Below are positions 23,887 through 62,892 of a stretch of 64,000 bases of DNA, one piece after another (the stretch's first letter is position 1; the number at the start of each line of letters is the position of its first letter). The notes beneath the pieces were generated by a model, which was not told where the DNA came from, did no database searches, and worked only from the letters and a program-made list of their open reading frames with translations. The stretch spans positions 17,546,001-17,610,000 of the forward strand of contig NC_135251.1 in assembly GCF_964204865.1 (NCBI RefSeq), read 5' to 3'. The translations under genes and the position numbers were made by a program. Source of the stretch: Styela clava (lineage: Eukaryota).

Positions 23887-26477
23887 TTAGAACATGTCGT
23901 GACATTCGCCTCGAATTACTTCCATTCTCATGCATGGGTGATTATTCCATGATAATGGGTACAAACGAATAAGGCGACAAATCAGAGGTTTGGGAAACAT
24001 GTTAATCACTTTAGAATCCTCATCCGTGTTTCCTACAAAGACCTAAAGTAAAAAAACACATCATTTTGCAAAACACGACAAACGTTATTGTTATGATACC
24101 AATATCAAAAAGATTATAAGGGGAATAGAAATTGATAAATAGAAATGAATAATACAAATTTTGTTGTAATTTCCAGTTTCATCCTGCTTGTATACTTGGG
24201 AACCTGCGAATGAATTATTAGTATAGGATAGGATTTACATATTTATTTCTGGGGAGAGGAAAGCCGATACGGTGGCTTAATCATATGAAAAACCGCGGTC
24301 TCTCGTTCGGTTATCAGACCATGTCAGGTACGGGATTGTTAGCCAGTTATTCTTTTCAGATGCATGGAATTGATAGTGGTGAAAGCCGTAACCGACCAGG
24401 GGTTAAGTTAATCACTCTACGACAGAGAGGAGTCCCGCAATCATCTTACACATAGCTATTCTCGCATGGGATTCGAAACTGCGAACCCACGCAAGGTAAT
24501 CAGAGATGCGGTGGCGGGCGTATTTCTATATACCAATGTTTTTTGTTTAGTTGTTTAATTTCTATAGTGGGGTTACGGGCGATCACTGTAATAGCTTGTT
24601 ATACCGTAGTGATTGCGTGTAGCCAGATTGGTTTTTACCAAATAGAAGCAGCAGATTTTTTTGAATACAATAGCCCTTCATCGTATTATTTTGTTTTTCA
24701 TCCCTCGTGTACGATTATATAAAAGAAAATTGTGCGATACATACTTTGTCGACAGAATTATCCGTTATAGTTCTCAGAGTAGAAGTTGAATTCCCACACG
24801 CTACTTTGTATGTTTTTACCCACTGATTGTGATCCCATCCATATTTAATTGGGCGTCCCTGAGTTACTATTCCACCTATAAATCTCGGACGTTGAAAATC
24901 AACCTGAATCCACGGATGATTTGCTGAAAAATAATACTTTATAAATTTATTAGGATTTTTTTGAAAACTGTATACATGTTTTTACGTGTTTAACGCGAAT
25001 ATTTGCCACCGGATGTTGTTGGACTTGTCAAAATTATCGTTTATTTTTATTTATTTTTTTATTTACCTGATTCAGAGGTTATAATCAAAAAGAGATAGAG
25101 AACCGTTGATTGAGTATACAATTTTACATTCAAATAATGGGACATCGTACTCTTACTAATAATTTAAGTTAGAAAGGGCATGCAATGGTACTCATTTAAA
25201 AAACCTGGAGGGCCTAATTGGAAAGTAAAAAAACTGCAAAGATACAATGGATTATCAAGTGGAATTCAACACAGAAATACTTACTATCGTGTGTGGGGCA
25301 CCAAGCACCTATACTAAATCCAGTTGAAGCTGTATAGAAAACAGCATTTTCATCCATTCGTCCATGATGAGCGGCATGTCGGTAATCATAATCAGATGAT
25401 GCAGTAATCGCATGATCTGGAATATCCCTGTTCTTCATTCCCAATCCACAGTATGATACTGCAATGAATATGAAAGGATTTTCCATTTTATAAATAAGTA
25501 CTTCGATTATGTTCTACTGATCATCTGAGTATTTTCACGGAGTATTAGTTTCCATCGAATTGATCAATTGCAAACAACAATCGTCGCTTCGATCGAACTG
25601 TTGTATTCGATAACTGACTATAGTACTGCATATTTTGAAAATGGCGAATATGAAATATTATATATACGAATAATATAATTTATTTGCTTGACCCCTCTAC
25701 AAATAAGCTCACGACCGACTATGGCTTATATAGAATAGACCATAAGTCATTAACTATTTTCTCATTTCAGTTCCTTTCCTGGGTAAAATGAAATGTAAAA
25801 AATATATTGAATTGTAAATATCTTACGTTTTGGAATAATGTCAACGGTTTTCTTCATTTTTTCTAAAGTATAAATGCAAGAAGAAGAGCTCAATTATCTT
25901 TATTTTCCTATACGTATGTTGTATAATTAATGTTTTAATTTATTCAAATAAACTTCGTTGATAAACACTGTTTTATTATCTACTGGACCTGGTCTAGTAA
26001 AAATTCATTGCCAATTAAAAAACTCGTTCGTTTTTCCAAAATGGTATTTATTCTGTAAATATAAGTTCTGGACAAGTAATAAGCTTGGGTTTCACGCGAT
26101 TCCATAGCGAGCCGTCCGAAATAATCTAAAATGTGATTCATGACGTCAACGTGTCTCGTTTCCAGTTGGCTATATTTAGGACGTAGGAAATGAAATTTCT
26201 ATGCAAAAAATTTACCTTCTAACAATCTTATTTTATCTTCCAGGCTTTCCGTTGTCCCCTCTTGGCCTCTGTCACCTTTTACACCAGGCAGACCCCTCCT
26301 ACCCTCTGGCCCTCGCTTTCCAGGCCTTCCCTGGCACTGATCAGCACAGCTATGACTCGATGCAGTTTTGTCAGTCATTAGAGCAGAACAAAACTCGTAT
26401 ACGTTCGGTATGTCACCTAAAACTGCAGGTATGATCACGACACAGCACCATAATACGACAAAAGATTTATGCGGCAT
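23887..26477 (-). CDS. Secreted collagen-neck-discoidin (F5/8 type C) protein, copy A1, 268 aa
   Basis: Exons 26477-26216, 25862-25827, 25458-25285, 24923-24745, 24042-23887; all GT-AG, 807 nt. Signal peptide, (GXY)9, heptad neck, and discoidin motifs CGLGM..IPD..ITASS, AWC, WIQVDF..GIVTQG, QWVKTYKV, FVGNTD, RLYPLSW..CMRMEV..C. Confidence 0.92.
24223..24522 (-). mobile_element. tRNA-derived SINE in intron 4 of gene A (also in A2 and A3; partial in T, B and C copies)
   Basis: On the - strand there is a B-box-like TTCGAATCC and an (ATCCT)n tail. B-type introns keep the head, with A-box-like TGGCGCAACGTG and GGTACGAATCC (e.g. ~55920-56005). Confidence 0.65.
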
Positions 26478-26619
26478 ATCTATTTTATTTAATATTAACC
26501 GCAATAAAAAAAAGTATATTGTAGAAAATTTGGGCAAATATTTTCATCTTTGAAAAGCTTCCATATGTCCTGATAAATGTAATTTAAAATTGAAATGAAC
26601 ATATCGTTATACGGTTATA

Positions 26620-26980
26620 CCCTCTGTTCAATATGTCAAACATTGTAGTTAACGGCTTTGTTGTATCTTAACTTCCAAACTATTATTTTGCATCATTCCG
26701 AATTTACAAATACTACTCCATGACTAGATGCCGCTAATGTTTTTTTGACTTTGCCATCTTATATATATATATAAATATTAGGTCATCAGGGAAATAACGT
26801 TATATTTCACATTTTTTTCAAATTGAAATGACAATGGTTTTAATGTGTGAATTGAATGAGCTTCAGTATTTTCTCGTGGGAAACTTACATAGCGCTGATT
26901 TTCCTAACCACATCGTATGATTAGATATTATGTTAAAGGCATTTACCGAGCCACTAATAATCCAATAGGTTGGTGGTGAT
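26620..26980 (-). promoter_or_regulatory. Putative promoter and non-coding first exon of gene A1 (repeated upstream of every copy)
   Basis: (TA)n TATA-like box at ~26760-26774; CGTGGGAA at 26875-26882; AACCACA at 26906-26912; CCAAT at ~26962; candidate 5'-UTR donor GG|gtataa at 26620. Confidence 0.5.
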
Positions 26981-27499
26981 TGATTTGATATTTTAAATCA
27001 GTGCTTACGCTAATAAATGTAATTTGTTGAAATCCAAGTAAGACTGGTTACAAACACTCATTTAGTTCAATACCCAAGCACCGCTTATTTTGTGTTTCAG
27101 GGAGGCGAATACTGTGCGTGCGGGAAAGACGATATGTCTGGGCGCATGCTTGACCAAGCTTATTTTTACGAAAAAGTTCACAAGTTTCGTCGCTAATAAT
27201 TATAAGAAACAAACGGGCCGACACGGATGCCTTGACCAATGAACGATCCGTCAACGCAAACTACGATGAACCCGGCATAGGTGATTATATTCGCGGCACT
27301 CCCAGAGAATCGTAGTCTTCTCTCATTGGGCAGTGATAGACCTCCCTTGGGACACACAATAAGACAAAAGTGACCCAATGAGTGCGTTGACGCTTAAGTT
27401 GAGAAACATATAAAATTTTTGCAAATTCCAACTAAACGGTTAAGTACTTATAGGCCTTGAATCTAAAATTCAGTGTAAACTAAGTTCGGTTCAAAGTGG

Positions 27500-28669
27500 T
27501 AGGCCTATTGCAAGGATGGCATTCGATGGAGAAATTTCTAACAATCAGTCGATCGCAAGATATTAAGAAAATGTTAATCGATCTCGGCGATCCGCTGCGC
27601 ATATCCATATATTGTAAACTGTAGTAGTTTTTAGGATAAAAGCTTTGGAATCGTGTGGTAATTGTCACAGCTCAAAAAAGCAACAGAAAGTCATAGCTAT
27701 TTAAAGATGAGAATCACTCAAAAAAATTCAGAAACCCGAAAATCTGCATGCGTGCTTTTTCCGTTCGGCATTCTTTTTTTCGATAAATATTACTATCCAA
27801 ATAAAAGGTTATGAATATTTCTTTGTTTAAACCAGAAAACTGTAAAGAACAGTATAATATTCCTGAGTTCACCTTGACACCCATGAATTTGTTGCGACGC
27901 TGCAGGTGGCTACGAGACGCACAACAAAGTAGGGACCGCAGTGATCTTTACCGGGTGAGGCACAGCAGGATTTTGAGCCTGGTGCGAAGTTCGCAAGGAC
28001 ATTCTCATTGTAATATAAATTCATTTTTTTTGAAGCATTGATCAACTGCAGAGGCATTGATATAATGAACCCAATGAAAATTTTACTTTACAGTCCAGAT
28101 TTATAAAAGAATCATTGTCACAATTCATTCTTGGGCTCTCTTGATAACGTTTACCCATCGATAAGTATACGAGCATTTAAACTGTTGTCCGAATTTTCAA
28201 CCAGTTACTTCTAGCTTCAATTAAAACGAAACAAATAAATCGACTGTGAGCCGCTGCGGAGCTTTGTGTTGCAAAACCTTTTTTAGATGCCTCGTTTGCA
28301 GTCCTGTATTGAAAACGACACAGTAGCAAAATTCTCCCTGGAGTTATATGATTTGACATCTGCATGTTTTTATGTGAGATGTGTACCTTTTTTACGCATA
28401 ATGCGTGCCCAGCACTGCATCTTATTACGGAAATATAAGTTATTAATTTATATTCCACCCATTTCAATTTTTGTCGGCACATTATTTGATAGTTTTTCCT
28501 CATGCGAAATGTTTTTAGGGGGTGCCTTTTTTTTCTAAAGGCATAGTGATTGCTCGACATTACGCAAATATATGTTATTATTTTCTTTTCCACTAATTTC
28601 AGTTTTTGCCGGTCCGCAAAGACATTTTATTTTACCGGTCCGCCAGGGTAGAAAGGTTGGGAACCACTG
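27500..28669. mobile_element. Truncated hAT (Charlie-like) element, right end only; copies at +12,261, +24,522 and ~58.8-60.0 kb
   Basis: Terminus GGTTGGGAACCACTG followed by TTCTAGAG, a typical Charlie-type target; subterminal CCGGTCCGC repeats. No matching left TIR was found and the left boundary is approximate. Confidence 0.6.
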
Positions 28670-29162
28670 TTCTAGAGACATATCGGTGGATTGACCGCTC
28701 AACCAATCTCAATGTTGGAATCAGAAGTTATTATCAAAGATTATTATGCTTTTCATTTATTTTTTCCCTTTTATGTATTTTGTTGGCGGCTTTTTGATTA
28801 TCTCTACTTTGGATCTCTATCAATTTCATACACGATCTAACACAAGTTGAACGAGTTTTATTGAAAATCATTAATGCGTAATGCCTACTTATGAAATTTA
28901 TAAGTGTTATGAAGAACAACAACAAGAAGCAACATCTGAAGCAGTCTACAAAATTTGAAAACTTTGAAAAAAAGAAACAACATATTTTATGATTGCTGAT
29001 AAAACTGAAAATTTGAAACGCGGTTCAATAGTGAAAAGAAAAACAACTAGTCGATTTAGTGTTTGATAATGAGCCAAAAGTTAGCTCAATATTTCAGTAA
29101 AATTCTGAAAAGGCGTTCCTAGGTCGGTTGTAAGCCTATTCAAAGTCGAATAGCATGGATTC

Positions 29163-30051
29163 TTAGAACAAGTCGTGACATTCGCCTCGAATTACTTCCA
29201 TTCTCATGCATTGGTGATATTTCCATGATAATGGGTACAAACAAACAAAGCGACAAATCAGAGGTTTGGGAAACATGTTAATCACTTTAGAATTCTCATC
29301 CGTGTTTCCTGAAAAGACCTATAGTAAAACATAAATAAAAATATTATTTTACAAAATACGACAAACATTATTGTTATACTTTCGATATAAAAAAGCACAA
29401 AAGAAATAGATGAATAGGAAAATAACTGAAAAGTTTATTGTAATTTCCAGATTAATCTTGCTTATATACTTGGAACCTTACGAAGGAAATATTAAGATAG
29501 GATTTGCATATTTAACCCGGGGAGAGGTAAACTGATAAGACGGCTTAATCATATGTCGAACCCCGGCCTCGAGTACGGCTACCAGTCCGCGTCGGGAATG
29601 AAATTAGTTGGCCAGTTATTTGTTTCCGGTTTATAGACTTGTTAGTGGAGAAAGCCGTAACCGACCGGCGCTTACGTGAACCACCCTATACGGCAGCGAA
29701 AAGTTTAGCAATTTTCTCGCACATTTGATACGAATATGCGAACCCACGAATTAGTAACTAATATAGGTAATAATGAATAGCTAATATATTTATATATATA
29801 ATAGTTCTTCATCGTATTACTTTTTTTATCCCTAGTGTGCGTTTATATACAAGAATATTGTACGATACATACTTTGTCAATAGCATTATCCGTTATAGTT
29901 CTCAGAGTAGAAGTTGAATTCCCACACGCTATTTTGCATGTTTTTACCCACTGATTGAAGTCCCATACGTATTTAATTGGGCGTCCCTGTGTTACTATTC
30001 CACCTATAAATCTCGGGCGTTGAAAATCAACCTGAATCCACTGATCATTTG
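29163..30051 (-). pseudogene. Orphan discoidin exons 4-5 (cassette T1)
   Basis: Exons 30051-29873 and 29318-29163 have open frames and intact splice sites. Intron 3 jumps at ~30395 into intron-1 sequence and then into gene B's 3' flank; exons 1-3 are absent. Confidence 0.8.
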
Positions 30052-31167
30052 CTGATAAATATTAATTCGCAAATTCAGTATGATTTTCCTTTTTTTGAAA
30101 CTGTATCAAATTTTTACGTGTTTAACGCAAAATAGTTTCCTCCGGATATTATTGAAGTTGTTATAGTAATCGCTGGCTTTTATAAAATATTTACCTGATT
30201 TGATGGTTATACTCAGAAAAAGATAGATAATCTGTTGGTTCATTACAATTTTTACATGCAAATAATGATACGTCGTACTCCTATTAAAAAATATAGTGCA
30301 TGGAAGGGGCATGGCAAAGGTACTCGCTATATATATATGGAGGGCCTCGTTTAAAAAATAAAACAAAAATGTTGAGATACATCGATTGGAAGTGATCGTT
30401 TTGCAAATTGTTGGACTGAGAGTCATTACTTGAGGAATTATAGGGACCCCAGGAGGCATTTGTGTTAAAAATGGCTGCCCTGGAGTAATGACACAATTCT
30501 CTACATTGCAGCTTTCGTATTTTGCGCACTATCGTTGCATATTACCATTTTATTTAATTCCTAAACTGCCTGGGTGTTTTTGTCAAATTTGTGACACCGA
30601 AAAAACGAATAACATACACTGATATCTCTGGATTGACCGTTCGATCAACGTTGGAATCAGAATTTATTATCAAAGATATTTATGTTTTCAAATTTGTATC
30701 CTTGTTGGCGACTTTTTGACTATATCCACCGGGACCTCTACCAATTTTATACACGACCTAACACAAGTTAAACGAGTTTTATTAAAAAAACTAATGCGTT
30801 ACGCTTATATTTACGAAATTCAAGTTTTAACACATGATGAAAATAGTACAATACTTAAATGCTCATGCACACGAATACGGAAGTTAATTGGCACCATTTT
30901 TTTCGTACGTTAGCAACATCTGAAGCAGTCTACAAAATTTGAAAACTTATCAAAATAAACAACATATTTTATCTACTGTACTGATAACAATTGCTGCAAA
31001 ACTAAACATTTGAAACGCGATTCAGTAGTGAAAATGAGAAAACTAATCGATTTAGTGTTTGATATTGAGCCAAAAGTTGGCTTAATCTTTCAGTAAAATT
31101 GTGTAAATCCTGTGAAGGCTTTTCTAGATCGTCTGTAAGCCTATTCGAAGTCGAATAGCATAGATTC

Positions 31168-33331
31168 TTAGAACATGTCGTGACATTCGCCTCGAATTAC
31201 TTCCATTCTCATGCATATGCCAATATTCCAGGACATTGGATATAAACGAACAAAACGACAAGACAGAGGTTTGGGGAACATGTTAATCACTTTAGAATCC
31301 TCATCCGTGTTTCCTACAAAAACCTAAAGGAAAAACAACATCATTTTACAAAAGAGACGAGAAATTCAGTAATCCCCTCGCACATAATTATCTCACGTGG
31401 GATTCGTACCCACGCAGATAATCAGAGGTGCGGTGGCGAACGTACTCGTAAAGCATAGCACGTTGCGCCACAAATCTAAATCGTAAGAAAATTTCAAAAG
31501 CAACTAATTTCAATACGAATGTTTGCTGTTCAGTTATTTAATTTCCATAGCGGTGTTACGGGCACCATTGAAATGGCATGGTCTGTCGCTGTCAATGTGT
31601 GTAGCTAGATTGGTTTTTACCAGTGAAGTAGTATATTTATTCAAATATAATACCCCTTTTTCGTATTGCTGTTTGTTTTTCATCCTTTGTCTACAATCAT
31701 ATAAAAGAAAATTATACGATACATACTTTGTCGATCTCATTATCCGTTATAGTTCTCAGAGTAGAAGTTGAATTCCCACACGCTACTTTGTATGTTTTTA
31801 CCCGCTGATTGTAGTTCCATCTGTATTTAATTGGGCGGCCCTGAGTTACTATTCCACCTATAAATCTCGGACGTTGAAAATCAATCTGAATCCACTCACC
31901 ATTTGCTGATAAATATTAATTCGCAAATTTAGTATGAGTTTTATATTTTTTAGAAACTGTTAAAATATTTTTACGTTTAATCGTTTACTTTTCAAAATGT
32001 CTACCTGATTGGAAGATTAGAAAAAGGTGAAGAATCGACTGTTAATTCATTACAATTTTACATGGGAATAATAGTACATCGTGCTCCTTAGAAGTGGCAT
32101 GCTATGGGGCTCGTTTAAAAAATATAGAGGGCTTCGTTTGAAATATAAAACGAAATGTTAGGATCCACTTGATGTTAAGATATATCAAGTGAAAGTGAAC
32201 ACAAAAATACCTACTGTTTTGTCCGGAGCACCAGGCACCTACACTAAATCCAGATGAAGCTGTATGGAAAACAGCATTTTCATTCATTCGTCCATGATGA
32301 GCGGCATGTCGGTAATCAGAAACAGATGATGCAGTAATCACATGATCTGGAATATCCCTGCTCTTCATTCCCATTCCACAGTAGGATACTGCAATGGATA
32401 TAAAAGAAATTTTCTATTTATAAATAAGTGCTTCGATTATATTCTACTGATCATCTGATTATTTTTATGGTATGGATATAGAACAAATTTTATTTACCTG
32501 ATTATTTAATTTCGTAGGCCAATAGTCATTATTTTTCTATTTCAGTACCTATCCAGAGTAAAATGAAATGTAAAAAAATACATTGAATTTTAAATTACTT
32601 ACGTTTTGGAATAATGTCAACGGTTTTCTTCATTTTTTCTGAAGTAAAAATCAAGAAGATGCGCTCAGATTATCCTTAATTTCCTTTTTGTATTTTGTAG
32701 AATTAAACAGTTTTAATTTATTCAAATAAATTCTAATAAAATTCCTTGTGTCTCACTGTTTTATTATCCACTGGACACGGCCCAGAAAAAATTAATTGCC
32801 GTTTCAGGAACTTGTTTTACGAATTGTCGGACCGAAAGTCACTGCTCGATGAATTATATCAAAACAATTCATTTTTCATAAAATGTATTCATTCTGTGCA
32901 ATATAAGTTCTGAAAATGTAATATGCTTGGGTTTCACGCAATTCCATATCAAACCCGTCCAAAATAATTCAAAATGTAATGTCCAAAATGTAAATGTAAT
33001 GTCTCAGTTCCAGTTGGCTATATTTAGGGCGTAAAAAATGAATGTTAAATGCATAACAAAAAAGCTTACCTTCTAACAATCTTATTTTCTCCTCCAAGCG
33101 TTCCGTTGTCCCCTCTTCGCCTCTGTCACCTTTTACACCAGGCAGACCCCTCCTACCCTCTGGCCCCCGCTTTCCGGGCCTTCCCTGGCACTGAGCAGCA
33201 CAGTTATGACTCGATGCAGTTTTGTCAGTCATTAGAGCAGAACAAAACTCGTATACGTTCGGTATGTCACTTAAAACTGCAGGTATGATTACGACACAGC
33301 ACCATAATACGACGAAAGATTTATGCGGCAT
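31168..33331 (-). CDS. Secreted collagen-neck-discoidin protein, copy B1, 268 aa
   Basis: Exons 33331-33070, 32638-32603, 32388-32215, 31905-31727, 31323-31168; open frame. Carries a W>R change in the QWV motif. Confidence 0.88.
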
Positions 33332-34031
33332 ATCTATTTTATTCAATATTAATTGCAATTAAAAAAAGTATATTGTAGAAAATTTGGGCAAATATTTTCA
33401 TCTTTGAAAGGCTTCCATATGTCCTGATAAATGTAATTTAAAATTGAAATGAACATATCGTTATACCCTCTGTTTAATATCAAACATTGTAGTTAACGGC
33501 TTTGTTGTATCTTAACTTCCAAACTATTGTTTAGCATCATCCCGAATTTACAAATACCACTCCATGACTAGACGCCGCTAATGTTGTTTTGACCTTGCCA
33601 TCTTATATATATAGAGAGAGAGAGAAATATTAGGTCATCAGGGTACTAACGTTATATTTCACATTTTAGTTTTTCGAAACTGAAATGGAAGTTCAAAAAA
33701 TGCCGAGACAATGGTTTTAATGTGTAAATTGAACGAGCTTCAGTATTTTCTCGTGGGAAACTTACATTGCGCTGTTTTTCCCAACCACATCGCCTGATCG
33801 TAAAGAGATTATATTTTGAAAACATTTACCAAACCACTAAGCCAATAAAGCTTGGTGGTGACTAATTGATATTTTAAATCAGTGCTAACGCTAATAAATG
33901 TAATTTGTTGAGATCCAAGTGAGACTGGTTACAAATACTCATTTATTTCAGTATCCAAGCACCGCTTATTTTGAGTCCCTATGCTTACTCTAATCTGGAA
34001 AGAAGTATTCATCAATATCACCTATATGTAT

Positions 34032-34838: not shown

Positions 34839-34932
34839 ATATGTATCATTTTTTCTTTTGCCTGGAAGGTTTGATAGTTAGACAGTTTGAATGCAAATTA
34901 TATTCAAATTTGTCATTTTTTAAAGAATAAAT

Positions 34933-35815: not shown

Positions 35816-36146
35816 GGAAAGACAGAAATGCTCATGCACACGAATACGAAAGTCAATTGTCACCATTTTCCTCGTACTTTTAGCAACATCTGAAGTAGTA
35901 TAATTATACAGATTGAAAAAATTTACAAAATTAAACATTATATTCTATCTACTGTAATGATTCTGATTGCTGCTGAAACTGAAAATTTAAAACGCGGATC
36001 AACAGTGAAAAAGAGAAGCAACTGGTCGATTTAATGTTTGATAATGAGTCAAAAGTTGGCTTTATCTTTCAGTAAAATTTTGTAAATCCTGTAAAGGCTT
36101 TTCTCGGTCGTTTGTAAGCCTATTCAATGTCGAATAGCATGGATTC

Positions 36147-50999: not shown

Positions 51000-53684
51000 A
51001 TCTATTTTATTTAATATTAACCGCAATAAAAAAAAGTATATTGTAGAAAATTTGGGCAAATATTTTCATCTTTGAAAAGCTTCCATATGTCCTGATAAAT
51101 GTAATTTAAAATTGAAATGAACATATCGTTATACGGTTATACCCTCTGTTCAATATGTCAAACATTGTAGTTAACGGCTTTGTTGTATCTTAACTTCCAA
51201 ACTATTATTTTGCATCATTCCGAATTTACAAATACTACTCCATGACTAGATGCCGCTAATGTTTTTTTGACTTTGCCATCTTATATATATATATAAATAT
51301 TAGGTCATCAGGGAAATAACGTTATATTTCACATTTTTTTCAAATTGAAATGACAATGGTTTTAATGTGTGAATTGAATGAGCTTCAGTATTTTCTCGTG
51401 GGAAACTTACATAGCGCTGATTTTCCTAACCACATCGTATGATTAGATATTATGTTAAAGGCATTTACCGAGCCACTAATAATCCAATAGGTTGGTGGTG
51501 ATTGATTTGATATTTTAAATCAGTGCTTACGCTAATAAATGTAATTTGTTGAAATCCAAGTAAGACTGGTTACAAACACTCATTTAGTTCAATACCCAAG
51601 CACCGCTTATTTTGTGTTTCAGGGAGGCGAATACTGTGCGTGCGGGAAAGACGATATGTCTGGGCGCATGCTTGACCAAGCTTATTTTTACGAAAAAGTT
51701 CACAAGTTTCGTCGCTAATAATTATAAGAAACAAACGGGCCGACACGGATGCCTTGACCAATGAACGATCCGTCAACGCAAACTACGATGAACCCGGCAT
51801 AGGTGATTATATTCGCGGCACTCCCAGAGAATCGTAGTCTTCTCTCATTGGGCAGTGATAGACCTCCCTTGGGACACACAATAAGACAAAAGTGACCCAA
51901 TGAGTGCGTTGACGCTTAAGTTGAGAAACATATAAAATTTTTGCAAATTCCAACTAAACGGTTAAGTACTTATAGGCCTTGAATCTAAAATTCAGTGTAA
52001 ACTAAGTTCGGTTCAAAGTGGTAGGCCTATTGCAAGGATGGCATTCGATGGAGAAATTTCTAACAATCAGTCGATCGCAAGATATTAAGAAAATGTTAAT
52101 CGATCTCGGCGATCCGCTGCGCATATCCATATATTGTAAACTGTAGTAGTTTTTAGGATAAAAGCTTTGGAATCGTGTGGTAATTGTCACAGCTCAAAAA
52201 AGCAACAGAAAGTCATAGCTATTTAAAGATGAGAATCACTCAAAAAAATTCAGAAACCCGAAAATCTGCATGCGTGCTTTTTCCGTTCGGCATTCTTTTT
52301 TTCGATAAATATTACTATCCAAATAAAAGGTTATGAATATTTCTTTGTTTAAACCAGAAAACTGTAAAGAACAGTATAATATTCCTGAGTTCACCTTGAC
52401 ACCCATGAATTTGTTGCGACGCTGCAGGTGGCTACGAGACGCACAACAAAGTAGGGACCGCAGTGATCTTTACCGGGTGAGGCACAGCAGGATTTTGAGC
52501 CTGGTGCGAAGTTCGCAAGGACATTCTCATTGTAATATAAATTCATTTTTTTTGAAGCATTGATCAACTGCAGAGGCATTGATATAATGAACCCAATGAA
52601 AATTTTACTTTACAGTCCAGATTTATAAAAGAATCATTGTCACAATTCATTCTTGGGCTCTCTTGATAACGTTTACCCATCGATAAGTATACGAGCATTT
52701 AAACTGTTGTCCGAATTTTCAACCAGTTACTTCTAGCTTCAATTAAAACGAAACAAATAAATCGACTGTGAGCCGCTGCGGAGCTTTGTGTTGCAAAACC
52801 TTTTTTAGATGCCTCGTTTGCAGTCCTGTATTGAAAACGACACAGTAGCAAAATTCTCCCTGGAGTTATATGATTTGACATCTGCATGTTTTTATGTGAG
52901 ATGTGTACCTTTTTTACGCATAATGCGTGCCCAGCACTGCATCTTATTACGGAAATATAAGTTATTAATTTATATTCCACCCATTTCAATTTTTGTCGGC
53001 ACATTATTTGATAGTTTTTCCTCATGCGAAATGTTTTTAGGGGGTGCCTTTTTTTTCTAAAGGCATAGTGATTGCTCGACATTACGCAAATATATGTTAT
53101 TATTTTCTTTTCCACTAATTTCAGTTTTTGCCGGTCCGCAAAGACATTTTATTTTACCGGTCCGCCAGGGTAGAAAGGTTGGGAACCACTGTTCTAGAGA
53201 CATATCGGTGGATTGACCGCTCAACCAATCTCAATGTTGGAATCAGAAGTTATTATCAAAGATTATTATGCTTTTCATTTATTTTTTCCCTTTTATGTAT
53301 TTTGTTGGCGGCTTTTTGATTATCTCTACTTTGGATCTCTATCAATTTCATACACGATCTAACACAAGTTGAACGAGTTTTATTGAAAATCATTAATGCG
53401 TAATGCCTACTTATGAAATTTATAAGTGTTATGAAGAACAACAACAAGAAGCAACATCTGAAGCAGTCTACAAAATTTGAAAACTTTGAAAAAAAGAAAC
53501 AACATATTTTATGATTGCTGATAAAACTGAAAATTTGAAACGCGGTTCAATAGTGAAAAGAAAAACAACTAGTCGATTTAGTGTTTGATAATGAGCCAAA
53601 AGTTAGCTCAATATTTCAGTAAAATTCTGAAAAGGCGTTCCTAGGTCGGTTGTAAGCCTATTCAAAGTCGAATAGCATGGATTC

Positions 53685-54574
53685 TTAGAACAAGTCGTGA
53701 CATTCGCCTCGAATTACTTCCATTCTCATGCATTGGTGATATTTCCATGATAATGGGTACAAACAAACAAAGCGACAAATCAGAGGTTTGGGAAACATGT
53801 TAATCACTTTAGAATTCTCATCCGTGTTTCCTGAAAAGACCTATAGTAAAACATAAATAAAAATATTATTTTACAAAATACGACAAACATTATTGTTATA
53901 CTTTCGATATAAAAAAGCACAAAAGAAATAGATGAATAGGAAAATAACTGAAAAGTTTATTGTAATTTCCAGATTCATCTTGCTTATATACTTGGAACCT
54001 TACGAAGGAAATATTAAGATAGGATTTGCATATTTAACCCGGGGAGAGGTAAACTGATAAGACGGCTTAATCATATGTCGAACCCCGGCCTCGAGTACGG
54101 CTACCAGTCCGCGTCGGGAATGAAATTAGTTGGCCAGTTATTTGTTTCCGGTTTATAGACTTGTTAGTGGAGAAAGCCGTAACCGACCGGCGCTTACGTG
54201 AACCACCCTATACGGCAGCGAAAAGTTTAGCAATTTTCTCGCACATTTGATACGAATATGCGAACCCACGAATTAGTAACTAATATAGGTAATAATGAAT
54301 AGCTAATATATTTATATATATAATAGTTCTTCATCGTATTACTTTTTTTATCCCTAGTGTGCGTTTATATACAAGAATATTGTACGATACATACTTTGTC
54401 AATAGCATTATCCGGTTATAGTTCTCAGAGTAGAAGTTGAATTCCCACACGCTATTTTGCATGTTTTTACCCACTGATTGAAGTCCCATACGTATTTAAT
54501 TGGGCGTCCCTGTGTTACTATTCCACCTATAAATCTCGGGCGTTGAAAATCAACCTGAATCCACTGATCATTTG
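53685..54574 (-). pseudogene. Orphan discoidin exons 4-5 (cassette T3), frameshifted
   Basis: As T1, but with a 1-bp insertion in exon 4 (tccggttata at 54411-54420 versus tccgttata). Confidence 0.8.
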
Positions 54575-55692
54575 CTGATAAATATTAATTCGCAAATTCA
54601 GTATGATTTTCCTTTTTTTGAAACTGTATCAAATTTTTACGTGTTTAACGCAAAATAGTTTCCTCCGGATATTATTGAAGTTGTTATAGTAATCGCTGGC
54701 TTTTATAAAATATTTACCTGATTTGATGGTTATACTCAGAAAAAGATAGATAATCTGTTGGTTCATTACAATTTTTACATGCAAATAATGATACGTCGTA
54801 CTCCTATTAAAAAATATAGTGCATGGAAGGGGCATGGCAAAGGTACTCGCTATATATATATGGAGGGCCTCGTTTAAAAAATAAAACAAAAATGTTGAGA
54901 TACATCGATTGGAAGTGATCGTTTTGCAAATTGTTGGACTGAGAGTCATTACTTGAGGAATTATAGGGACCCCAGGAGGCATTTGTGTTAAAAATGGCTG
55001 CCCTGGAGTAATGACACAATTCTCTACATTGCAGCTTTCGTATTTTGCGCACTATCGTTGCATATTACCATTTTATTTAATTCCTAAACTGCCTGGGTGT
55101 TTTTGTCAAATTTGTGACACCGAAAAAACGAATAACATACACTGATATCTCTGGATTGACCGTTCGATCAACGTTGGAATCAGAATTTATTATCAAAGAT
55201 ATTTATGTTTTCAAATTTGTATCCTTGTTGGCGACTTTTTGACTATATCCACCGGGACCTCTACCAATTTTATACACGACCTAACACAAGTTAAACGAGT
55301 TTTATTAAAAAAACTAATGCGTTACGCTTATATTTACGAAATTCAAGTTTTAACACATGATGAAAATAGTACAATACTTAAATGCTCATGCACACGAATA
55401 CGGAAGTTAATTGGCACCATTTTTTTCGTACGTTAGCAACATCTGATGCAGTCTACAAAATTTGAAAACTCATCAAAAATAAACAACATATTTTATCTAC
55501 TGTACTGATAACAATTGCTGCTAAAACTAAACATTTGAAACGCGGTTCAGTAGTGAAAATGAGAAAACTAATCGATTTAGTGTTTGATATTGAGCCAAAA
55601 GTTGGCTTAATCTTTCAGTAAAATTGTGTAAATCCTGTGAATGCTTTTCTAGATCGTCTGTAAGCCTATTTGAAGTCGAATAGCATAAATTC

Positions 55693-57866
55693 TTAGAACA
55701 TGTCGTGACATTCGCCTCGAATTACTTCCATTCTCATGCATATGCCAATATTCCAGGACATTGGATATAAACGAACAAAACGACAAGACAGAGGTTTGGG
55801 GAACATGGTAATCACTTTAGAATCCTCATCCGTGTTTCCTACAAAAACCTGAAGTAAAAAAAACATCATTTTACAAAAGAGACGAGAAATTCAGTAATCC
55901 CCTCGCACATAATTATCTCACGTGGGATTCGTACCCACGCAGATAATCAGAGGTGCGGTGGCGAACGTACTCGTAAAGCTTAGCACGTTGCGCCACAACG
56001 CCGAGAACAAATCTAAATCCTAAGAAAATTTCAAAAGCAACTAATTTCAATACGAATGTTTTCTGTTCAGTTATTTAATTTCCATAATGGTGTTACGGGC
56101 ACCATTGAAATGGCATGGTCTGTCGCTGTCAATGTGTGTAGCTAGATTGGTTTTTACCAGTGAAGTAGAAAATTTATTCAAATATAATACCCCTTTTTCG
56201 TATTGCCGTTTGTTTTTCATCTTTTGTCTACAATCATATAAAAGAAAATTATACGATACATACTTTGTCGATCTCATTATCCGTTATAGTTCTCAGAGTA
56301 GAAGTTGAATTCCCACACGCTACTTTGTATGTTTTTACCCACTGATTGAAGTCCCATCCGTATTTAATTGGGCGTCCCTGAGTTACTATTCCACCTATAA
56401 ATCTCGGACGTTGAAAATCAATCTGAATCCACTCACCATTTTCTGATAAATATTAATTCGCAAATTTAGTATGAGTTTTCTATTTTTTAGAAACTGTTAA
56501 AATATTTTTACGTTTAATCGTTTACTTTTCAAAATGTCTACCTGATTGGAAGGTTAGAAAAAGGTGAAGAATCGGCTGTTAATTCATTACAATTTTACAT
56601 GGAAATAATAGTACATCGTGCTCCTTAGAAGTGGCATGCTATGGGGCTCGCTTAAAAACTATGGAGGGCTTCGTTTGAAATATAAAACAAAATGTTAGGA
56701 TCCACTTGATGTTAAGATATATCAAGTGGAAGTGAACACAAAAATACCTACTGTTTTGTCCGGAGCACCAGGCACCTACACTAAATCCATTTGAAGCTGT
56801 ATGGAAAACAGCATTTTCATCCATTCGTCCATGATGAGCGGCATGTTGGTAATTAAAATCAGATGATGCAGTAATCACATGATCTGGAATATCCCTGCTC
56901 TTCATTCCCATTCCACAGTAGGATACTGCAATGGATAAAAAAGAAATTTTCTATTTATAAATAAGTGCTTCGATTATATTCTACTGATCATCTGATTATT
57001 TTTATGGTATGGATATAGAACAAATTTTATTTACCTGATTATTTAATTTTGTAGTCCAATAGTCATTATTTTTCTATTTCAGTACCTATCCAGAGTAAAA
57101 TGAAATGTAAAAAAATACATTGAATTTTAAATTACTTACGTTTTGGAATAATGTCAACGGTTTTCTTCATTTTTTCTGAGGTAAAAATGCAAGAAGATGC
57201 GCTCAGATTATCCTTAATTTCCTTTTCGTATTTTGTAGAATTAAACAGTTTTAATTTATTCAAATAAATTCTAATAAAATTCTTTGTGTCTCACTGTTTT
57301 ATTATCCACTGGACACGGCCCAGAAAAAATTAATTGCCGTTTCAGGGACTTGTTTTGCGAATTGTCGGACCTAAAGTCACTGCTCGATGAATTATATCAA
57401 AACAATTCATTTTTCATAAAATGTATTTATTCTGTGCAATATAAGTTCTGAAAAAGTGATATGCCTGGGTTTCACGCAATTCCATACCAAACCCGTCCAA
57501 AATAATTCAAAATGTAATGTCCAAAATGTAAATGTAATGTCTCAGTTCCAGTTGGCTATATTTAGGGCGTAAAAAATGAATGTTAAATGCATAACAAAAA
57601 AGCTTACCTTCTAACAATCTTATTTTCTCCTCCAAGCGTTCCGTTGTCCCCTCTTCGCCTCTGTCACCTTTTACACCAAGCAGACCCCTCCTACCCTCTG
57701 GCCCCCGCTTTCCGGGCCTTCCCTGGCACTGAGCAGGACAGTTATGACTCGATGCAGTTTTGTCAGTAATTAGAGCAGAACAAAACTCGTATACGTTCGG
57801 TATGTCACCTAAAACTGCAGGTATGATCACGACACACCATAATACGACAAAAGATTTATGCGGCAT
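55693..57866 (-). CDS. Collagen-neck-discoidin protein, diverged copy B3, 267 aa
   Basis: Exons 57866-57608, 57175-57140, 56925-56752, 56442-56264, 55848-55693; open frame. One Cys codon is deleted from the signal peptide and the QWV Trp is retained. Confidence 0.9.
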
Positions 57867-60557
57867 ATCTATTTTATTTAATATTAACTGCAATAAAAAA
57901 AGTATATTGTAGAAAATTTGGGCAAATATTTTCATCTTTGAAAGGCTTCCATATGTCAAACATTGTAGTTAACGGCTTTGTTGTATCTTAACTTCCAAAC
58001 TATTATTTTGCATCATTCCGAATTTACAAATACTACTCCATGACTAGATGCCGCTAATGTTTTTTTGACTTTGCCATCTTATATATATATATAAATATTG
58101 GGTCATCAAGAAACTAACGTTACATTTCACTTTTGTTTTTTAAATTGAAATGACAATGGTTTTAATGTGTGAATTGAACGAGCTTCAGTATTTTCTCGTG
58201 GGAAACTTACATTGCGCTGATTTTCCTAACCACATCGTACGATTAGATAATATGTTAAAGGCCATTACCGAGCCACTAATAATCCAATAGGTTGGTGGTG
58301 ATTGATTTAATATTTTAAATCAGTGCTAACGCTAATAAATGTAATTTGTTGAGATCCAAGTAAGACTGGTTACAAATACTCATTTAGTTCAATATCCAAG
58401 CACAGCTTATTTTATGTTTCAAGGAGGCGAATACTGTGCGTGCGGGAAAGACAATATGTCTGGGCGCATGCTTGACCAAGCTTATTGTTACGAAAAAGTT
58501 CACAAGTTTCGTCACTAATAATTATAAGAAACAAACGGGCCGACACGGATGCCCTGACCAATGAACGATCCGTCAACGCAAACTACGATGAACTCCATAG
58601 GTGAATATATTCGCGGCACTCCTATAGAATCGGTAGTCTTCTTTCATTGGGCAGTGATAGACCTCCCTTGGGACACACAATAAGACAAAAGTAACCCAAT
58701 GAGTGCGTTGACGCTTAAGTTGAGAAACATAAAACTTTTGCAAATTCCAACTAAACGGTTAAATACTTATAGGCCTTGAATCTAAAATTCAGTGTAAACT
58801 AAGTTCGGTTCAAAGTGGGAGGATTATTGGAAGGATGGCATTCGATGGAGAAATTTCTAACAATCAGTCGATCGCAAGATATTAAGAAAATGTTAGTCGA
58901 TCTCGGCGATCCGCTGCGCATATTCATATATTGTAAACTGTAGTAGTTTTTAGGATAAAAGCTTTGGAATCGTGTGGTAATTGTCACAGCTCAAAAAAGC
59001 AACAGAAAGTCATAGCTATTTAAAGATGAGAATCACTCAAAAAAATTCAGAAACCCGAAAATCTGCATGCGTGCTTTTTCCGTTCGGCATTCTTTTTTTT
59101 CGATAAATATTACTATCCAAATAAAAGGTTATGAATATTTCTTTGTTTAAACCAGAAAACTGTCAAGAACAGTATAATATTCCTGAGTTCACCTTGACAC
59201 CCATGAATTTGTTGCGACGCTGCAGGTGGCTACGAGACGCACAACAAAGCATGGACCGCAGAGATCTTTACCGGGTGAGGCACAGCAGGATTTTGAGCCT
59301 GGTGCGAAGTTCGCAAGGACATTCTCATTGTAATATAAATTCTTTTTTTTTTTGAAGCATTGATCAACTGCAGAGGCATTGATATAATGAACCCAATGAA
59401 ACTTTTACTTTACAGTCCAGATTTATAAAAGAATCATTGTCACAATTCATTCTTGAGCTCTCTTGATAACGTTCACCCATCGATAAGTATACGAGCATTC
59501 AAACTGTTTTCCGAATTTTCAACCAGTTACTTCTAGCTTCAATTAAAACGAAATAAATAAATCGACTGTGAGCCGCTGCAGAGCTTTGTGTTGCAAAACC
59601 TTTTTTAGATGCCTCGTTTGAAATCCTGTATTGAAAACGACACAGTAGCAAAATTCTCCCTGGAAGGTATTTGTGTTTGTACATGATTTGACATCTATAT
59701 ACATATATTTATGTGAGATGTGTGCCTTTTTACACATAATCCGTGCCCAGCACTGCATTTTATTACGCAAATATAAGTTATTAATTTATATTCCACCCAT
59801 TCAAATATTTGTCGGCACATTAGTCGATAGTTTTTCCTCATGCGAAATGTTTTTAGGGAGTGCCTTTTTTTTCTAAAGGCATAGTGATTGCTCGACATTA
59901 CGCAAATATATGTTATTATTTTCTTTTCCACTAATTTCAGATTTTGCCGGTCCGCAAGTACATTTTATTTTACCGGTCCTCCAGGGTAGAAAGGTTGGGA
60001 ACCACTGTTCTAGAGACATATCGGTGGATTGACCGTTCAACCAATCTCAATGTTGGAATCAGAAGTTATTATCAAAGATTATTATGCTTTTCATTTATTT
60101 TTTCCCTTTTATGTATTTTGTTGGCGGCTTTTTGATTATCTCTACTTGGACCTCTATCAATTTCATACACGATCTAACACAAGTTGAACGAGTTTTATTG
60201 AAAATCATTAATGCGTTATGCCTACTTATGAAATTTATAAGTGTTATGAAGAAAAAATACAATACTTAGATGCTCATGCACATGGATACGAAAAGTAATT
60301 GTCATCATTTTTCTCGTAAGTTGGCAACATCTGAAGCAGTCTACAAAATTTGAAAACTTTGAAAAAAAGAAACAACATATTTTATGATTGCTGATAAAAC
60401 TGAAAATTTGAAACGCGGTTCAATAGTGAAAAGAAAAACAACTAGTCGATTTAGTGTTTGATAATGAGCCAAAAGTTAGCTTAATATTTCAGTAAAATCC
60501 TGTAAAGGCTTTTCTAGGTCGTTTGTAAGCCTATTCAATGTCGAATAGCATGGATTC

Positions 60558-62892
60558 TTAGAACATGTCGTGACATTCGCCTCGAATTACTTCCATTCTC
60601 ATGCATGAGTGATTATTCCATGATAATGGGTACAAACAAACAAAGCGACAAATCAGAGGTTTGGGAAACATGTTAATCACTTTAGAATTCTCATCCGTGT
60701 TTCCTAAAAAGACCTATAGTAAAAAATAAAAAAAATATCATTTTACAAAATACGACAAACATTATTGTTATAATTTCGATATAAAAAAAGCACAAAAGAA
60801 ATAGATGAATAGGAAAATAACTGCAAATTTTATTGTAATTTCCAGATTCATCTTGCTTATATACTTGGAACCTTACGAAGGAAATATTAAGATAGGATTT
60901 GCATATTTAACCCGGGGAGAGGTAAACTGATAAGACGGCTTAATCATATGTCGAACCCCGGCCTCGAGTACGGCTACCAGTCCGCGCCGGGAATGAAATT
61001 AGTTGGCCAGTTATTTGTTTCCGGTTTATAGACTTGTTAGTGGAGAAAGCCGTAACCGACCGGCGCTTACGTGAACCACCCTATACGGCAGCGAAAAGTT
61101 TAGCAATTTTCTCGCACATTTGATACGAATATGCGAACCCACGAATTAGTAACTAATATAGGTAATAATGAATAGCTAATATATTTATATATATAATAGT
61201 TCTTCATCGTATTACTTTTTTTATCCCTAGTGTGCGTTTATATACAAGAATATTGTACGATACATACTTTGTCAATAGCATTATCCGTTATAGTTCTCAG
61301 AGTAGAAGTTGAATTCCCACACGCTACTTTGTATGTTTTTACCCACTGATTGAAGTCCCATCCGTATTTAATTGGGCGTCCCTGTGTTACTATTCCACCT
61401 ATAAATCTCGGACGTTGAAAATCAACCTGAATCCACTCACGATTTGCTGATAAATAACAATTCGCAAATTTAGTATAAGTTTTTTATTTTTTTATGAAAC
61501 TGTATAATATTTTTACGTGTTTAATGCAAAATAGTTTCCTCTGGATATTAGTGAAGTTGTTATAGTAATCGTTTACTTTTATAACATATTTACCAGATTT
61601 GATGGTTATACTCAGAAAACGGTAAGTATTCTGTTGGTTCATTACATGTTTAAATGCAAATAATGATACGTCGTACTCCTATTAAAATTAAAGTGTATGG
61701 AAGAGCCATGGCAATGGTACTCGTTATAAAATATGATGGGCCTCGTTTGAAAAATAAAACGAAATGTTGAGATCCAATTGATGTTAAGATACATCGAGTG
61801 GATTTGAACACAAAAATACCTACTGTTTTCTCCGGAGCACCAGGCACCTACACTAAATCCATTTGAAGCTGTATGGAAAACAGCATTTTCATCCATTCGT
61901 CCAGGATGAGCGGCATGTTGGTAATTAGAATAAGATGATGCAGTAATCGCATGATCTGGAATATCCCTGCTCTTCATTCCCATTTCACAGTAGGCTATAC
62001 TGCAATGGATATGAAACAAATTTTAATTTTATATAAATAAGTACTTCGATTTAATTTAACGGATAATCCAACTTATTTTTTTTTTTTGAAAAATTAATTT
62101 CAGTGAAACTAGTCAACTGGCCAAACAACAATCGCCGATTCAGTCGAACAGTTATATTCGATATCAGAAACGTGTGACTAGTAGCCTATATAGCATATTT
62201 TGTTGAAAATAGCGAATGTGAAAAGATTTATTATTAAAAAGGTTCTTGACCCCTTTCGAAAACGCTCATGACCGACTGTGGCGTATAGAGACCATAGGTA
62301 AATAATTTTTCCATTTCAGTTCCTATTCTGGGTAATATGAAATCTAAAAAATATACTGAATTGTGAATATCTTACGTTTAGGAATAATGTCAACGGTTTT
62401 CTTCATTTTTTCTAAAGTAAAAATGCAATAAAAAGTGGTAAGATTATCTTCATTTTCCTATATATACGTATTTTGTATAATTAAACAGTTTTAAGTTTAT
62501 TCAAATAACTTCAAAACAGTAAAATTAATTGTGTCTCACTGTTTTATTATCCACTGGACCTGAGCTAGTAAAAAATCATTGTCGTAAAGGACTCGTTTTG
62601 CAAATTGTTGGACTGAAATTCACTACTTGAGGAATTATAGCGAACAATTCATTTTTCATAAATGATATTTATTCTGTGCAATATAAGTTCTGAACAAGTA
62701 ATATGCCTGGGTTTCATGCGATTCCATAGCGAGCCCGTCCAAAGTAATCTAGAATATAATTCATGGCGTCAACGTGTCTCGGTTTCAGTTGGATAAAGCA
62801 GAACAAAACTCGTATACGTTCGGTATGTTACTTAAAACTGCAGGTATGATCACGACACAGCACCATAATATAACAAAAGTTTTATGCGACAT
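60558..62892 (-). pseudogene. Disrupted collagen-discoidin copy C
   Basis: Exons 5 (60713-60558), 4 (61446-61268), 3 (~61999-61824) and 2 (62411-62376) are present. Exon 1 has lost ~210 bp (collagen, neck and donor), giving ..FCSALSN*. There is a 2-bp insertion at the exon-3 acceptor and two transposons in the TATA repeat. Confidence 0.85.

What the first reader, a model, noticed from the sequence alone, without database searches (positions are those of the whole stretch)
23887..62892. Candidate new 'defence collagen' family: collectin/ficolin layout with a discoidin (F5/8C) head
Seen: splicing five exons gives a 268-aa secreted protein with a signal peptide, a 3-Cys N-terminal segment (FCSA..SC..QC), nine Gly-X-Y triplets, a heptad neck (TESLEDKIRLLEEKMKKTVD) and one F5/8C domain. 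Established: the same layout with a CTLD, fibrinogen or gC1q head defines collectins, ficolins and C1q. Discoidin domains bind glycans or anionic phospholipids. Inference: this is a trimeric, disulfide-oligomerised pattern-recognition molecule with a different head domain, expanded in tandem as immune lectins often are. Automated annotation would probably call it only 'lactadherin-like'. I do not know of a characterised family with this layout but cannot search to confirm.
Basis: partly seen in the sequence, partly recalled or inferred. Interest (0 to 1): 0.85.

Follow-up and report, generated by a model that had tools for sequence, protein, structure and literature searches.

The report
Collagen-stalked discoidin lectin gene array
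A sea squirt (Styela clava) carries a tandem array of genes for small secreted proteins built like our collectins and ficolins but with a discoidin head, a layout shared by other sea squirts and amphioxus whose function is still untested.

Summary
On the minus strand of window 23887-62892 lie six intact five-exon genes, one truncated copy and several relics. My 268-aa and 267-aa models are identical to six Styela clava RefSeq proteins, which carry misleading names such as 'inactive carboxypeptidase-like protein X2'.

Each protein has:
- a signal peptide;
- a three-cysteine N-terminal segment;
- nine Gly-X-Y triplets;
- a heptad neck;
- one F5/8C discoidin domain.

The family is large and widespread:
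- at least 55 first-exon loci on 11 contigs of this genome;
- secreted relatives in Ciona and Clavelina;
- a membrane-anchored version in amphioxus.

The Gly-X-Y register, the flanking cysteines and the heptad pattern are conserved across these relatives. Paralogues differ mostly in the head loops.

The best reading is a disulfide-linked trimeric, multivalent soluble lectin or agglutinin. Trimer formation, ligand, expression of these copies and any link to complement are not shown.
- The trimer prediction gave no verdict.
- A 2019 paper on an agglutinating Styela clava 'lactadherin' could not be read and may already cover a member.

The scan found this family before on other DNA of this genome (s1-817517 and others). 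Verdict: a new variant of a known kind, of moderate interest.

The parts
23887..26477 (-). Gene A1, 268 aa. Exons 26477-26216, 25862-25827, 25458-25285, 24923-24745 and 24042-23887.
   Evidence: GT-AG at every junction and an open frame. Identical to RefSeq protein P0140.
26415..26477 (-). A1 signal peptide, residues 1-21. Predicted cleavage lies before the conserved D-I-P-N-V-Y-E-F-C motif.
   Evidence: Hydrophobic helix 5-20 in the model. The mature N-terminus is conserved in 27 paralogues. No signal-peptide predictor was available, so the cleavage site is inferred.
26331..26414 (-). A1 N-terminal segment, residues 22-49, with Cys30, Cys44 and Cys48. Cys48 lies two residues before the first Gly of the stalk.
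   Evidence: Cys30, Cys44 and Cys48 are invariant in the 14-sequence Styela alignment. Inter-chain disulfides are inferred.
26250..26330 (-). A1 collagen-like stalk: nine Gly-X-Y triplets, residues 50-76. It includes P-G-K-R-G-P at 26307-26324.
   Evidence: Eight glycines are invariant in Styela paralogues. Pro is the commonest residue at X and at Y, followed at Y by Arg and Lys.
25827..26249 (-). A1 neck, residues 77-100. It comprises the end of exon 1 (26249-26216) and the 36-nt micro-exon 2 (25862-25827), with intron 1 between them.
   Evidence: Helix 76-96 in the model. Core hydrophobic residues sit at 6 of 7 a/d positions. The family-wide heptad score is 0.62 against 0.26 for shuffles, reached by 0 of 2000 shuffles. 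Skipping exon 2 is annotated as a 256-aa isoform, P0145.
23887..25458 (-). A1 discoidin (F5/8C) head, exons 3-5, residues 101-268. Cys103 and Cys264 are the family's conserved end-to-end cysteine pair.
   Evidence: PF00754 at 1.1e-24. Model pLDDT is above 90 over most of the head. Foldseek TM-scores, normalised by target length, of 0.81-0.90 to single-domain chains of neuropilin b1, factor VIII and V C2 and lactadherin C2.
31168..33331 (-). Gene B1, 268 aa. Exons 33331-33070, 32638-32603, 32388-32215, 31905-31727 and 31323-31168.
   Evidence: Equals P0142. Differs from A2 at 35 residues, 29 of them in the head.
36147..38738 (-). Gene A2, 268 aa.
   Evidence: Identical to P0104, XP_077976090.1.
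43429..45592 (-). Gene B2, 268 aa.
   Evidence: Equals P0150.
48408..50999 (-). Gene A3, 268 aa.
   Evidence: Equals P0141.
55693..57866 (-). Gene B3, 267 aa.
   Evidence: Identical to P0105, XP_077966304.1.
60558..62892 (-). Copy D. A deletion in exon 1 removes the cysteine, collagen and neck part, and a stop follows E-F-C-S-A-L-S-N. Exons 2-5 are open.
   Evidence: RefSeq models it as a head-only 164-aa protein without a signal peptide, P0149.
29163..30051 (-). Orphan exon 4 + exon 5 fragment of a D-like copy. The same fragment recurs at 41424-42312 and 53685-54574.
   Evidence: blastn and tblastn. No exons 1-3 lie upstream. In the third copy the exon-4 blastn alignment is one column longer and the tblastn match stops short, which suggests a 1-nt indel.
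224..443 (-). Isolated relic of exon 1 (collagen part). It is frame-shifted.
   Evidence: No exons 2-5 lie within 8 kb to the left (locus L001).
23576..57957 (.). A 12,261-bp unit repeated three times at 98.5-99.3% identity. The third unit is incomplete.
   Evidence: k-mer spacing and self-blastn.

Best explanation
Window 23887-62892 is a recent tandem array in Styela clava. It belongs to a family found in tunicates and amphioxus. The genes encode small secreted glycoproteins with a signal peptide, a cysteine-bearing N-terminal segment, a nine-triplet collagen stalk, a coiled-coil neck of about three and a half heptads, and one discoidin head.

Inferred mechanism, none of it shown:
- The neck brings three chains together and nucleates a short triple helix.
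- The cysteines next to the helix lock the trimer and probably join trimers into larger oligomers.
- The clustered heads bind a repeated surface ligand, glycan or lipid, with high avidity.
- The protein therefore acts as a soluble agglutinin or opsonin, most likely in defence.
- Paralogues differ mainly in the ligand-binding loops, so the array would offer several specificities.
For: Shown:
- Exact gene models, identical to RefSeq proteins.
- Domain content.
- A canonical discoidin fold.
- At least 55 full-length first-exon loci on 11 contigs.
- The same layout in Ciona, Clavelina and unnamed run assemblies, and a membrane form in amphioxus.
- Species-specific expansions on the tree.
- The Gly register is conserved at 42-50% overall identity. 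Cysteines always flank the helix: N-terminal C-x3-C-Q-G here, G-x-C-x-C after the helix in other branches.
- X and Y positions are rich in Pro, Arg and Lys.
- The heptad signal was reached by 0 of 2000 shuffles.
- dN/dS between A and B is 0.27 in the stalk and 0.82 in the head. Changes cluster at residues 122-135, 154-161, 186-192 and 251-253.
- Head positions that differ between A and B are also more variable across the family (p = 0.02).

Inferred:
- These clusters align with the neuropilin b1 and lactadherin loop regions.
- Whole 222-268-aa reading frames of relatives on contigs of about 0.9-1.7 kb suggest spliced mRNA.
- A 2019 paper title reports an agglutinating 'lactadherin' glycoprotein from this species.
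Against: - There is no transcript evidence for these copies.
- Nine triplets is very short for a stable triple helix.
- The Pfam collagen score is below its cut-off.
- The trimer prediction did not reach its mark, which counts neither way.
- No ligand can be read from the sequence.
- Lineage-specific expansion and variable loops also occur in non-immune adhesion families.
- dN/dS in the head is below 1, so positive selection is not shown.
- The three 99.3%-identical units could partly be an assembly effect.
Confidence: 0.55

Rival explanations
1. A matrix or cell-adhesion protein rather than a defence lectin. A trimeric discoidin protein would organise tunic or extracellular matrix, or hold epithelial cells together, as retinoschisin and EDIL3 do.
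For: The head is closest to lactadherin, EDIL3, neuropilin and retinoschisin domains. The endostyle atlas reports a 'milk fat globule membrane' marker in thyroid-like epithelium and cites the 2019 paper. Tunic contains collagen and cellulose-like fibres. Amphioxus relatives are membrane-anchored, like the colmedins.
Against: The proteins are small and soluble. There are dozens of fast-diverging paralogues whose changes concentrate in the binding loops. No RGD motif is conserved.
Confidence: 0.22
2. A phosphatidylserine-binding opsonin for dying cells, that is, a functional lactadherin (MFG-E8) with a collagen stalk in place of the EGF-RGD part.
For: The head is 32-33% identical to both lactadherin C domains. 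Collagen stalks of defence collagens are bound by phagocyte receptors (general knowledge).
Against: The segment holding the W-G-L membrane spike of lactadherin C2 is a gap in the alignment. That this spike binds membrane is from my memory of the literature. The loops here are rich in His, Tyr, Asp and Trp, not in Leu/Phe pairs. There are no EGF domains and there is only one C domain.
Confidence: 0.1
3. The Gly-X-Y run is only a flexible linker and the protein is a monomeric or coiled-coil discoidin protein. Alternatively, the copies in this window are silent duplicates.
For: There are only nine triplets. The Pfam collagen score is below its cut-off. The trimer job gave no verdict. Copy D and several relics show that the array is decaying.
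Against: All glycines of the register are kept over long divergence and cysteines always abut the run. Six copies keep open frames and intact splice sites. Stalk dN/dS is 0.27.
Confidence: 0.08

Closest known systems
Collectins (mannose-binding lectin, surfactant proteins A and D)
   Same: The same order of parts: signal peptide, short cysteine-bearing N-terminal segment, collagen stalk, alpha-helical coiled-coil neck, one C-terminal globular head. Small size. A P-G-K-x-G-P motif in the stalk.
   Different: The head is a discoidin (F5/8C) domain, not a C-type lectin domain. The stalk has 9 triplets, fewer than in collectins (figure from memory: about 20 or more). The motif sits at the very start of the stalk. 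No function is known.
Ficolins and the C1q/CTRP family
   Same: Collagen stalk plus a globular recognition head, and tandem paralogue expansion in invertebrates.
   Different: Their heads are fibrinogen-like or gC1q. Ficolins and C1q lack a coiled-coil neck.
Lactadherin (MFG-E8) and EDIL3
   Same: The head is 32-33% identical to their C domains. These are the best non-tunicate sequence hits.
   Different: There are no EGF domains and one head instead of two. The W-G-L spike segment is absent in the alignment. A collagen stalk and neck are present.
Retinoschisin
   Same: A small secreted protein with one discoidin domain and an N-terminal cysteine-bearing oligomerisation segment.
   Different: Retinoschisin forms disulfide-linked octamer rings through its RS1 segment (general knowledge). 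Here the oligomerising parts are collagen and a coiled coil.
Membrane collagens with a globular head (gliomedin/colmedins, class A scavenger receptors)
   Same: The amphioxus relatives have this design: type II membrane anchor, coiled coil, a basic R-R-Y-R-R motif that looks like a furin site, collagen, cysteine knot and head.
   Different: Their heads are olfactomedin or SRCR domains. The tunicate proteins in this window are secreted, not anchored.
Styela plicata 'collectin-like' and 'second collagenous' lectins (Nair 2000; Green 2006), and Styela clava 'lactadherin' agglutinin (Guo, Dou and Dong 2019)
   Same: Collagenous lectins, and an agglutinating discoidin-type glycoprotein, from the same genus or species.
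   Different: I know them only from citations. Their sequences could not be compared, so identity with this family is open.

Membership tests
F5/8 type C (discoidin) domain proteins, PF00754 | A domain matching PF00754 above its curated cut-off, with the beta-barrel fold and terminal cysteine pair | tested here: met
   87.5 bits against a cut-off of 28.2. TM-scores, normalised by target length, of 0.81-0.90 to single-domain chains of solved discoidin domains. Cys103 and Cys264 are invariant.
Collectins | C-type lectin carbohydrate-recognition domain as the head | tested here: not met
   Pfam finds only F5_F8_type_C and collagen.
Collectins | N-terminal cysteine segment, collagen-like region and coiled-coil neck in that order | tested here: met
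   This rests on sequence and a monomer model only.
Ficolins | Fibrinogen-like head | tested here: not met
   No PF00147 hit.
C1q/TNF-related proteins | gC1q head | tested here: not met
   No PF00386 hit.
Soluble defence collagens (functional class) | Assembly into collagen triple-helical trimers and higher oligomers | tested here: inconclusive
   The sequence signs are strong. The three-copy prediction scored 0.26, under the mark of 0.32, and gave no verdict.
Soluble defence collagens (functional class) | Binding of microbial or altered-self ligands and recruitment of an effector (MASP/C1r-s or a phagocyte receptor) | not testable with these tools
   Only the motif could be counted. P-G-K-x-G-P occurs in 14 of 27 Styela clade-I proteins, 2 of 2 Styela clade-II and 6 of 6 Ciona proteins. 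Clavelina has Arg instead of Lys in 15 of 17. Amphioxus has it in 0 of 6.
Lactadherin / MFG-E8 | N-terminal EGF domains and two tandem discoidin domains | tested here: not met
   No EGF hit and a single discoidin domain.
Carboxypeptidase X2 / AEBP1 (the RefSeq name of these genes) | Discoidin domain followed by an M14 carboxypeptidase-like domain | tested here: not met
   The protein ends four residues after the closing cysteine of the discoidin domain, and there is no M14 hit.
Retinoschisin | RS1 N-terminal segment and octamer rings | tested here: inconclusive
   The match to retinoschisin chains covers only residues 93-261, the head and the end of the neck. The oligomer state was not tested.

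The most novel reading that the evidence does not exclude
These proteins are a further kind of complement lectin-pathway recognition molecule in invertebrate chordates, alongside the collectins and ficolins known in vertebrates. Discoidin-headed defence collagens would dock the ascidian MASP through the conserved P-G-K-x-G-P lysine and trigger C3 deposition. The tandem paralogues would supply different binding specificities.
Probability: 0.15. Interest if true: 0.85.

Novelty: new variant of a known kind. Interest (0 to 1): 0.55.

Why it matters
Collectins, ficolins and C1q show that a collagen stalk plus a recognition head is a repeated solution for innate recognition. A discoidin head on the same chassis, in the closest relatives of vertebrates, would:
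- add a new head type to that set;
- give a large, diversified lectin repertoire to test in Ciona, a laboratory model;
- bear on how the lectin pathway and the MFG-E8/EDIL3 discoidin proteins arose.

It also corrects database names that suggest a carboxypeptidase or a lactadherin.

Tried and rejected
The organisms and run types of the unnamed run-assembly proteins (P0012, P0021, P0044, P0208, P0211, P0212) are therefore unknown.
- Trimer prediction: three copies of residues 45-268 scored 0.25 and 0.26 against a mark of 0.32. This is no verdict and counts neither for nor against. Four earlier tries found the machine busy.
- The joined spliced model was not sent to any search tool. Searches were made exon by exon by reference. 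Full-length work used protein ids that the tools returned and that proved identical to the model. Exons were joined only inside scripts, for translation, comparison and dN/dS.
- Literature: ten full-text searches found no description of a collagen + discoidin family.
- Guo, Dou and Dong 2019 is not held. The endostyle atlas has no supplements held.
- Neuropilin-type C-end-rule pocket: by my mapping, most aligned positions differ, so I rejected it as a general reading. The residue roles are from memory.
- A furin or dibasic cleavage reading of G-K-R inside the stalk was considered and not pursued. There is no Arg at P4, and the site would lie inside a folded helix.
Full report
WHAT IS THERE

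The window has 32-38% G+C and no gaps. It is G000 contig C2:17546001-17610000. It comes from the sea squirt Styela clava, because its gene models equal RefSeq proteins of that species.

A 12,261-bp unit is repeated about three times between 23576 and 57957 at 98.5-99.3% identity. Each unit carries, on the minus strand:
- gene A;
- an orphan exon 4 + exon 5 fragment;
- gene B.

A seventh copy, D, follows at 60558-62892. An isolated exon-1 relic lies at 224-443.

GENE MODEL

Gene A1 has five exons: 26477-26216, 25862-25827, 25458-25285, 24923-24745 and 24042-23887. All introns are GT-AG with phases 1, 1, 1, 0. The exons give 807 nt, or 268 aa.

The six intact models equal RefSeq proteins exactly:
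- A2 = P0104 and B3 = P0105.
- A1 = P0140, A3 = P0141, B1 = P0142 and B2 = P0150.

Their RefSeq names do not fit the domain content. The names are 'inactive carboxypeptidase-like protein X2' and, in an older annotation, 'adipocyte enhancer-binding protein 1-like'. Pfam finds one F5/8C domain (1.1e-24) and a sub-threshold collagen hit, and nothing else.

An older RefSeq isoform of 256 aa (P0145) equals skipping of the 36-nt exon 2, which keeps the frame.

Copy D has a deletion in exon 1 that removes the cysteines, stalk and neck. RefSeq models it as a 164-aa head without a signal peptide.

How the searches were made: the joined model itself was never handed to a search tool. Searches went exon by exon, by reference. 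Full-length analyses used protein ids returned by those searches.

ANATOMY OF THE PROTEIN (P0104)

- Residues 1-21: hydrophobic signal segment.
- Residues 22-49: conserved D-I-P-N-V-Y-E-F-C start, with Cys30, Cys44 and Cys48.
- Residues 50-76: nine Gly-X-Y triplets.
- Residues 77-100: neck.
- Residues 101-268: discoidin head, closed by Cys103 and Cys264, with one N-x-T sequon at 202.

The monomer model has a mean pLDDT of 76. The head is above 90 over most of its length. There is a helix at 76-96, and the stalk has no regular structure, as expected for a single chain.

The head superposes on single-domain chains of neuropilin b1, factor VIII and V C2 and lactadherin C2 with TM-scores, normalised by target length, of 0.81-0.90. 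It matches them by sequence at about 1e-13 to 1e-29. Nothing solved matches the N-terminal 100 residues.

THE FAMILY

A search of 1.84 billion representatives with exon 1 alone found full-length 255-274-aa Styela proteins. In these the same N-terminal part is joined to a discoidin domain. One 409-aa form has an extra ILEI domain.

In the genome itself, exon 1 finds 94 matches. About 55 of them are near-full-length at E < 1e-8, on 11 contigs, mostly in clusters.

Profile searches then reached further relatives:
- About 17 Clavelina lepadiformis proteins.
- Six Ciona intestinalis proteins.
- Several unnamed proteins from run and metagenome assemblies.
- Amphioxus proteins in which the collagen + discoidin part follows a type II membrane anchor, a long coiled coil and an R-R-Y-R-R motif.

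No vertebrate, echinoderm or cnidarian hit carried five or more triplets. That search is word-limited, so absence is not proven.

On a tree rooted on amphioxus:
- The window genes sit in a Styela-only clade of 27 (SH-aLRT 97).
- Ciona and Clavelina form a separate clade (SH-aLRT 96).
- This pattern indicates expansions within lineages.

SIGNS OF A COLLAGENOUS TRIMER (SEQUENCE ONLY)

1. Eight of the stalk glycines are invariant among Styela paralogues that are only 42-50% identical overall. The register holds across genera.
2. Cysteines always abut the helix.
   - In the window's clade the pattern is C-x3-C-Q-G just before it.
   - In other Styela proteins, Ciona, Clavelina and the unnamed ones it is G-x-C-x-C just after it.
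   - In amphioxus it is G-G-C-G-G-C after it.
   - Cystine knots at helix ends are typical of trimeric collagens (general knowledge).
3. Pro is the commonest residue at X and at Y, followed at Y by Arg and Lys.
4. The 26-40 residues between stalk and head carry core hydrophobic residues at a/d positions.
   - P0104 has them at 6 of 7 positions.
   - The register relative to the end of the stalk is the same in most sequences.
   - The mean score is 0.62 against 0.26 for shuffles, reached by 0 of 2000 shuffles.

This is the order of parts seen in collectins. The one direct test I could run, a three-copy prediction, gave no verdict and is not used as evidence.

THE HEAD AND ITS LIGAND

Genes A and B differ at 35 residues, 29 of them in the head.
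- dN/dS is 0.27 for residues 1-100 and 0.82 for the head.
- Changes cluster at 122-135, 154-161, 186-192 and 251-253.
- Head positions that differ between A and B are more variable across the family than the rest (p = 0.02).
- In the alignments with neuropilin b1 and lactadherin, these clusters fall in the loops that form the binding end of discoidin domains. Which loops bind ligand is from general knowledge.

This fits diversification of specificity. However, dN/dS is below 1 and the numbers are small.

The segment that holds the W-G-L membrane spike of lactadherin C2 is a gap here, and a 9-11-residue insertion follows. I therefore rank phosphatidylserine binding below glycan or protein binding. 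The ligand remains unknown.

THE STALK MOTIF

P-G-K-R-G-P (26307-26324) has the form of the lysine motif by which collectins and ficolins hold their proteases (general knowledge). Counts:
- Present in 14 of 27 Styela clade-I proteins. G-K-x-G is present in 25 of 27.
- Present in 2 of 2 Styela clade-II proteins.
- Present in 6 of 6 Ciona proteins.
- Absent from 2817 background collagen triplets.
- Clavelina has Arg in place of Lys in 15 of 17 proteins.
- Amphioxus lacks it.

As far as I recall, the lysine is essential in mannose-binding lectin. The Clavelina state therefore argues against a universal protease-docking role. MASPs and C3 are well documented in ascidians. Docking is untested, and I give it about 15%.

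LITERATURE

I found no paper describing this layout in ten searches. A 2017 review of tunicate immunity lists collectins, ficolins, C1q-like proteins and MASPs and never mentions discoidin.

Two leads remain open:
- Collagenous lectins purified from Styela plicata (Nair 2000; Green 2006; cited).
[quoted passage not shown] It is not held in the library.

If that 2019 protein is a family member, an agglutinin function is already shown for one member, and novelty shrinks to recognising the stalk and the breadth of the family.

EARLIER SCAN NOTES

The scan noted the same family on other DNA of this genome. One follow-up called a member expressed. I treat that as a lead, not as evidence.

VERDICT

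- The layout and tandem expansion are real and conserved.
- Assembly, ligand and immune role are well-motivated inferences, not findings.
- I rate it a new variant of a known kind (defence-collagen design with a discoidin head), of moderate interest.

Noticed in passing
window 2500-3424 and 16357-20016, + strand: Two similar sets of exons for a rhodopsin-type receptor. The last exons are near-identical and carry an N-P-x-x-Y motif (3017-3424 and 19690-20016; weak 7tm_1 hit, E 0.0016). One exon has a Cys/Asp-rich pattern reminiscent of an LDL-receptor class A module (16357-16593; no Pfam hit). Possibly a duplicated LGR/relaxin-receptor-like gene.
   Followed up: partly
P0056 / P0138 (Styela clava, another chromosome): A family member of 409 aa carries an extra C-terminal ILEI (FAM3-like) domain after the discoidin head (PF15711, 4e-15).
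   Followed up: partly
P0261, P0270 and relatives (Branchiostoma): Amphioxus has a membrane-anchored version: type II anchor, long coiled coil, an R-R-Y-R-R motif, 11-12 triplets, a G-G-C-G-G-C knot and a discoidin head. One is named 'MFGE8' in its record.
   Followed up: partly
G000 contig C19, about 5.0-6.9 Mb: About 30 tandem loci match residues 21-71 of exon 1 weakly (E about 2e-4 to 8e-4). They may be another cysteine + collagen family in a large array.
   Followed up: no
window, introns of genes A and B: Introns of A and B differ by 18-27%, yet synonymous divergence of the exons is only 0.11. This suggests gene conversion between exons or constraint on them.
   Followed up: partly
P0145 (older RefSeq isoform of a gene A copy): Skipping of the 36-nt exon 2 is annotated. 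It would shorten the neck by 12 residues, nearly two heptads, and could change how the heads are held.
   Followed up: no
P0271 (Amphiura filiformis): A brittle-star protein combines an N-terminal discoidin domain with a C-terminal C1q domain (precomputed PF00754 + PF00386). This is another mix of defence-lectin modules.
   Followed up: no
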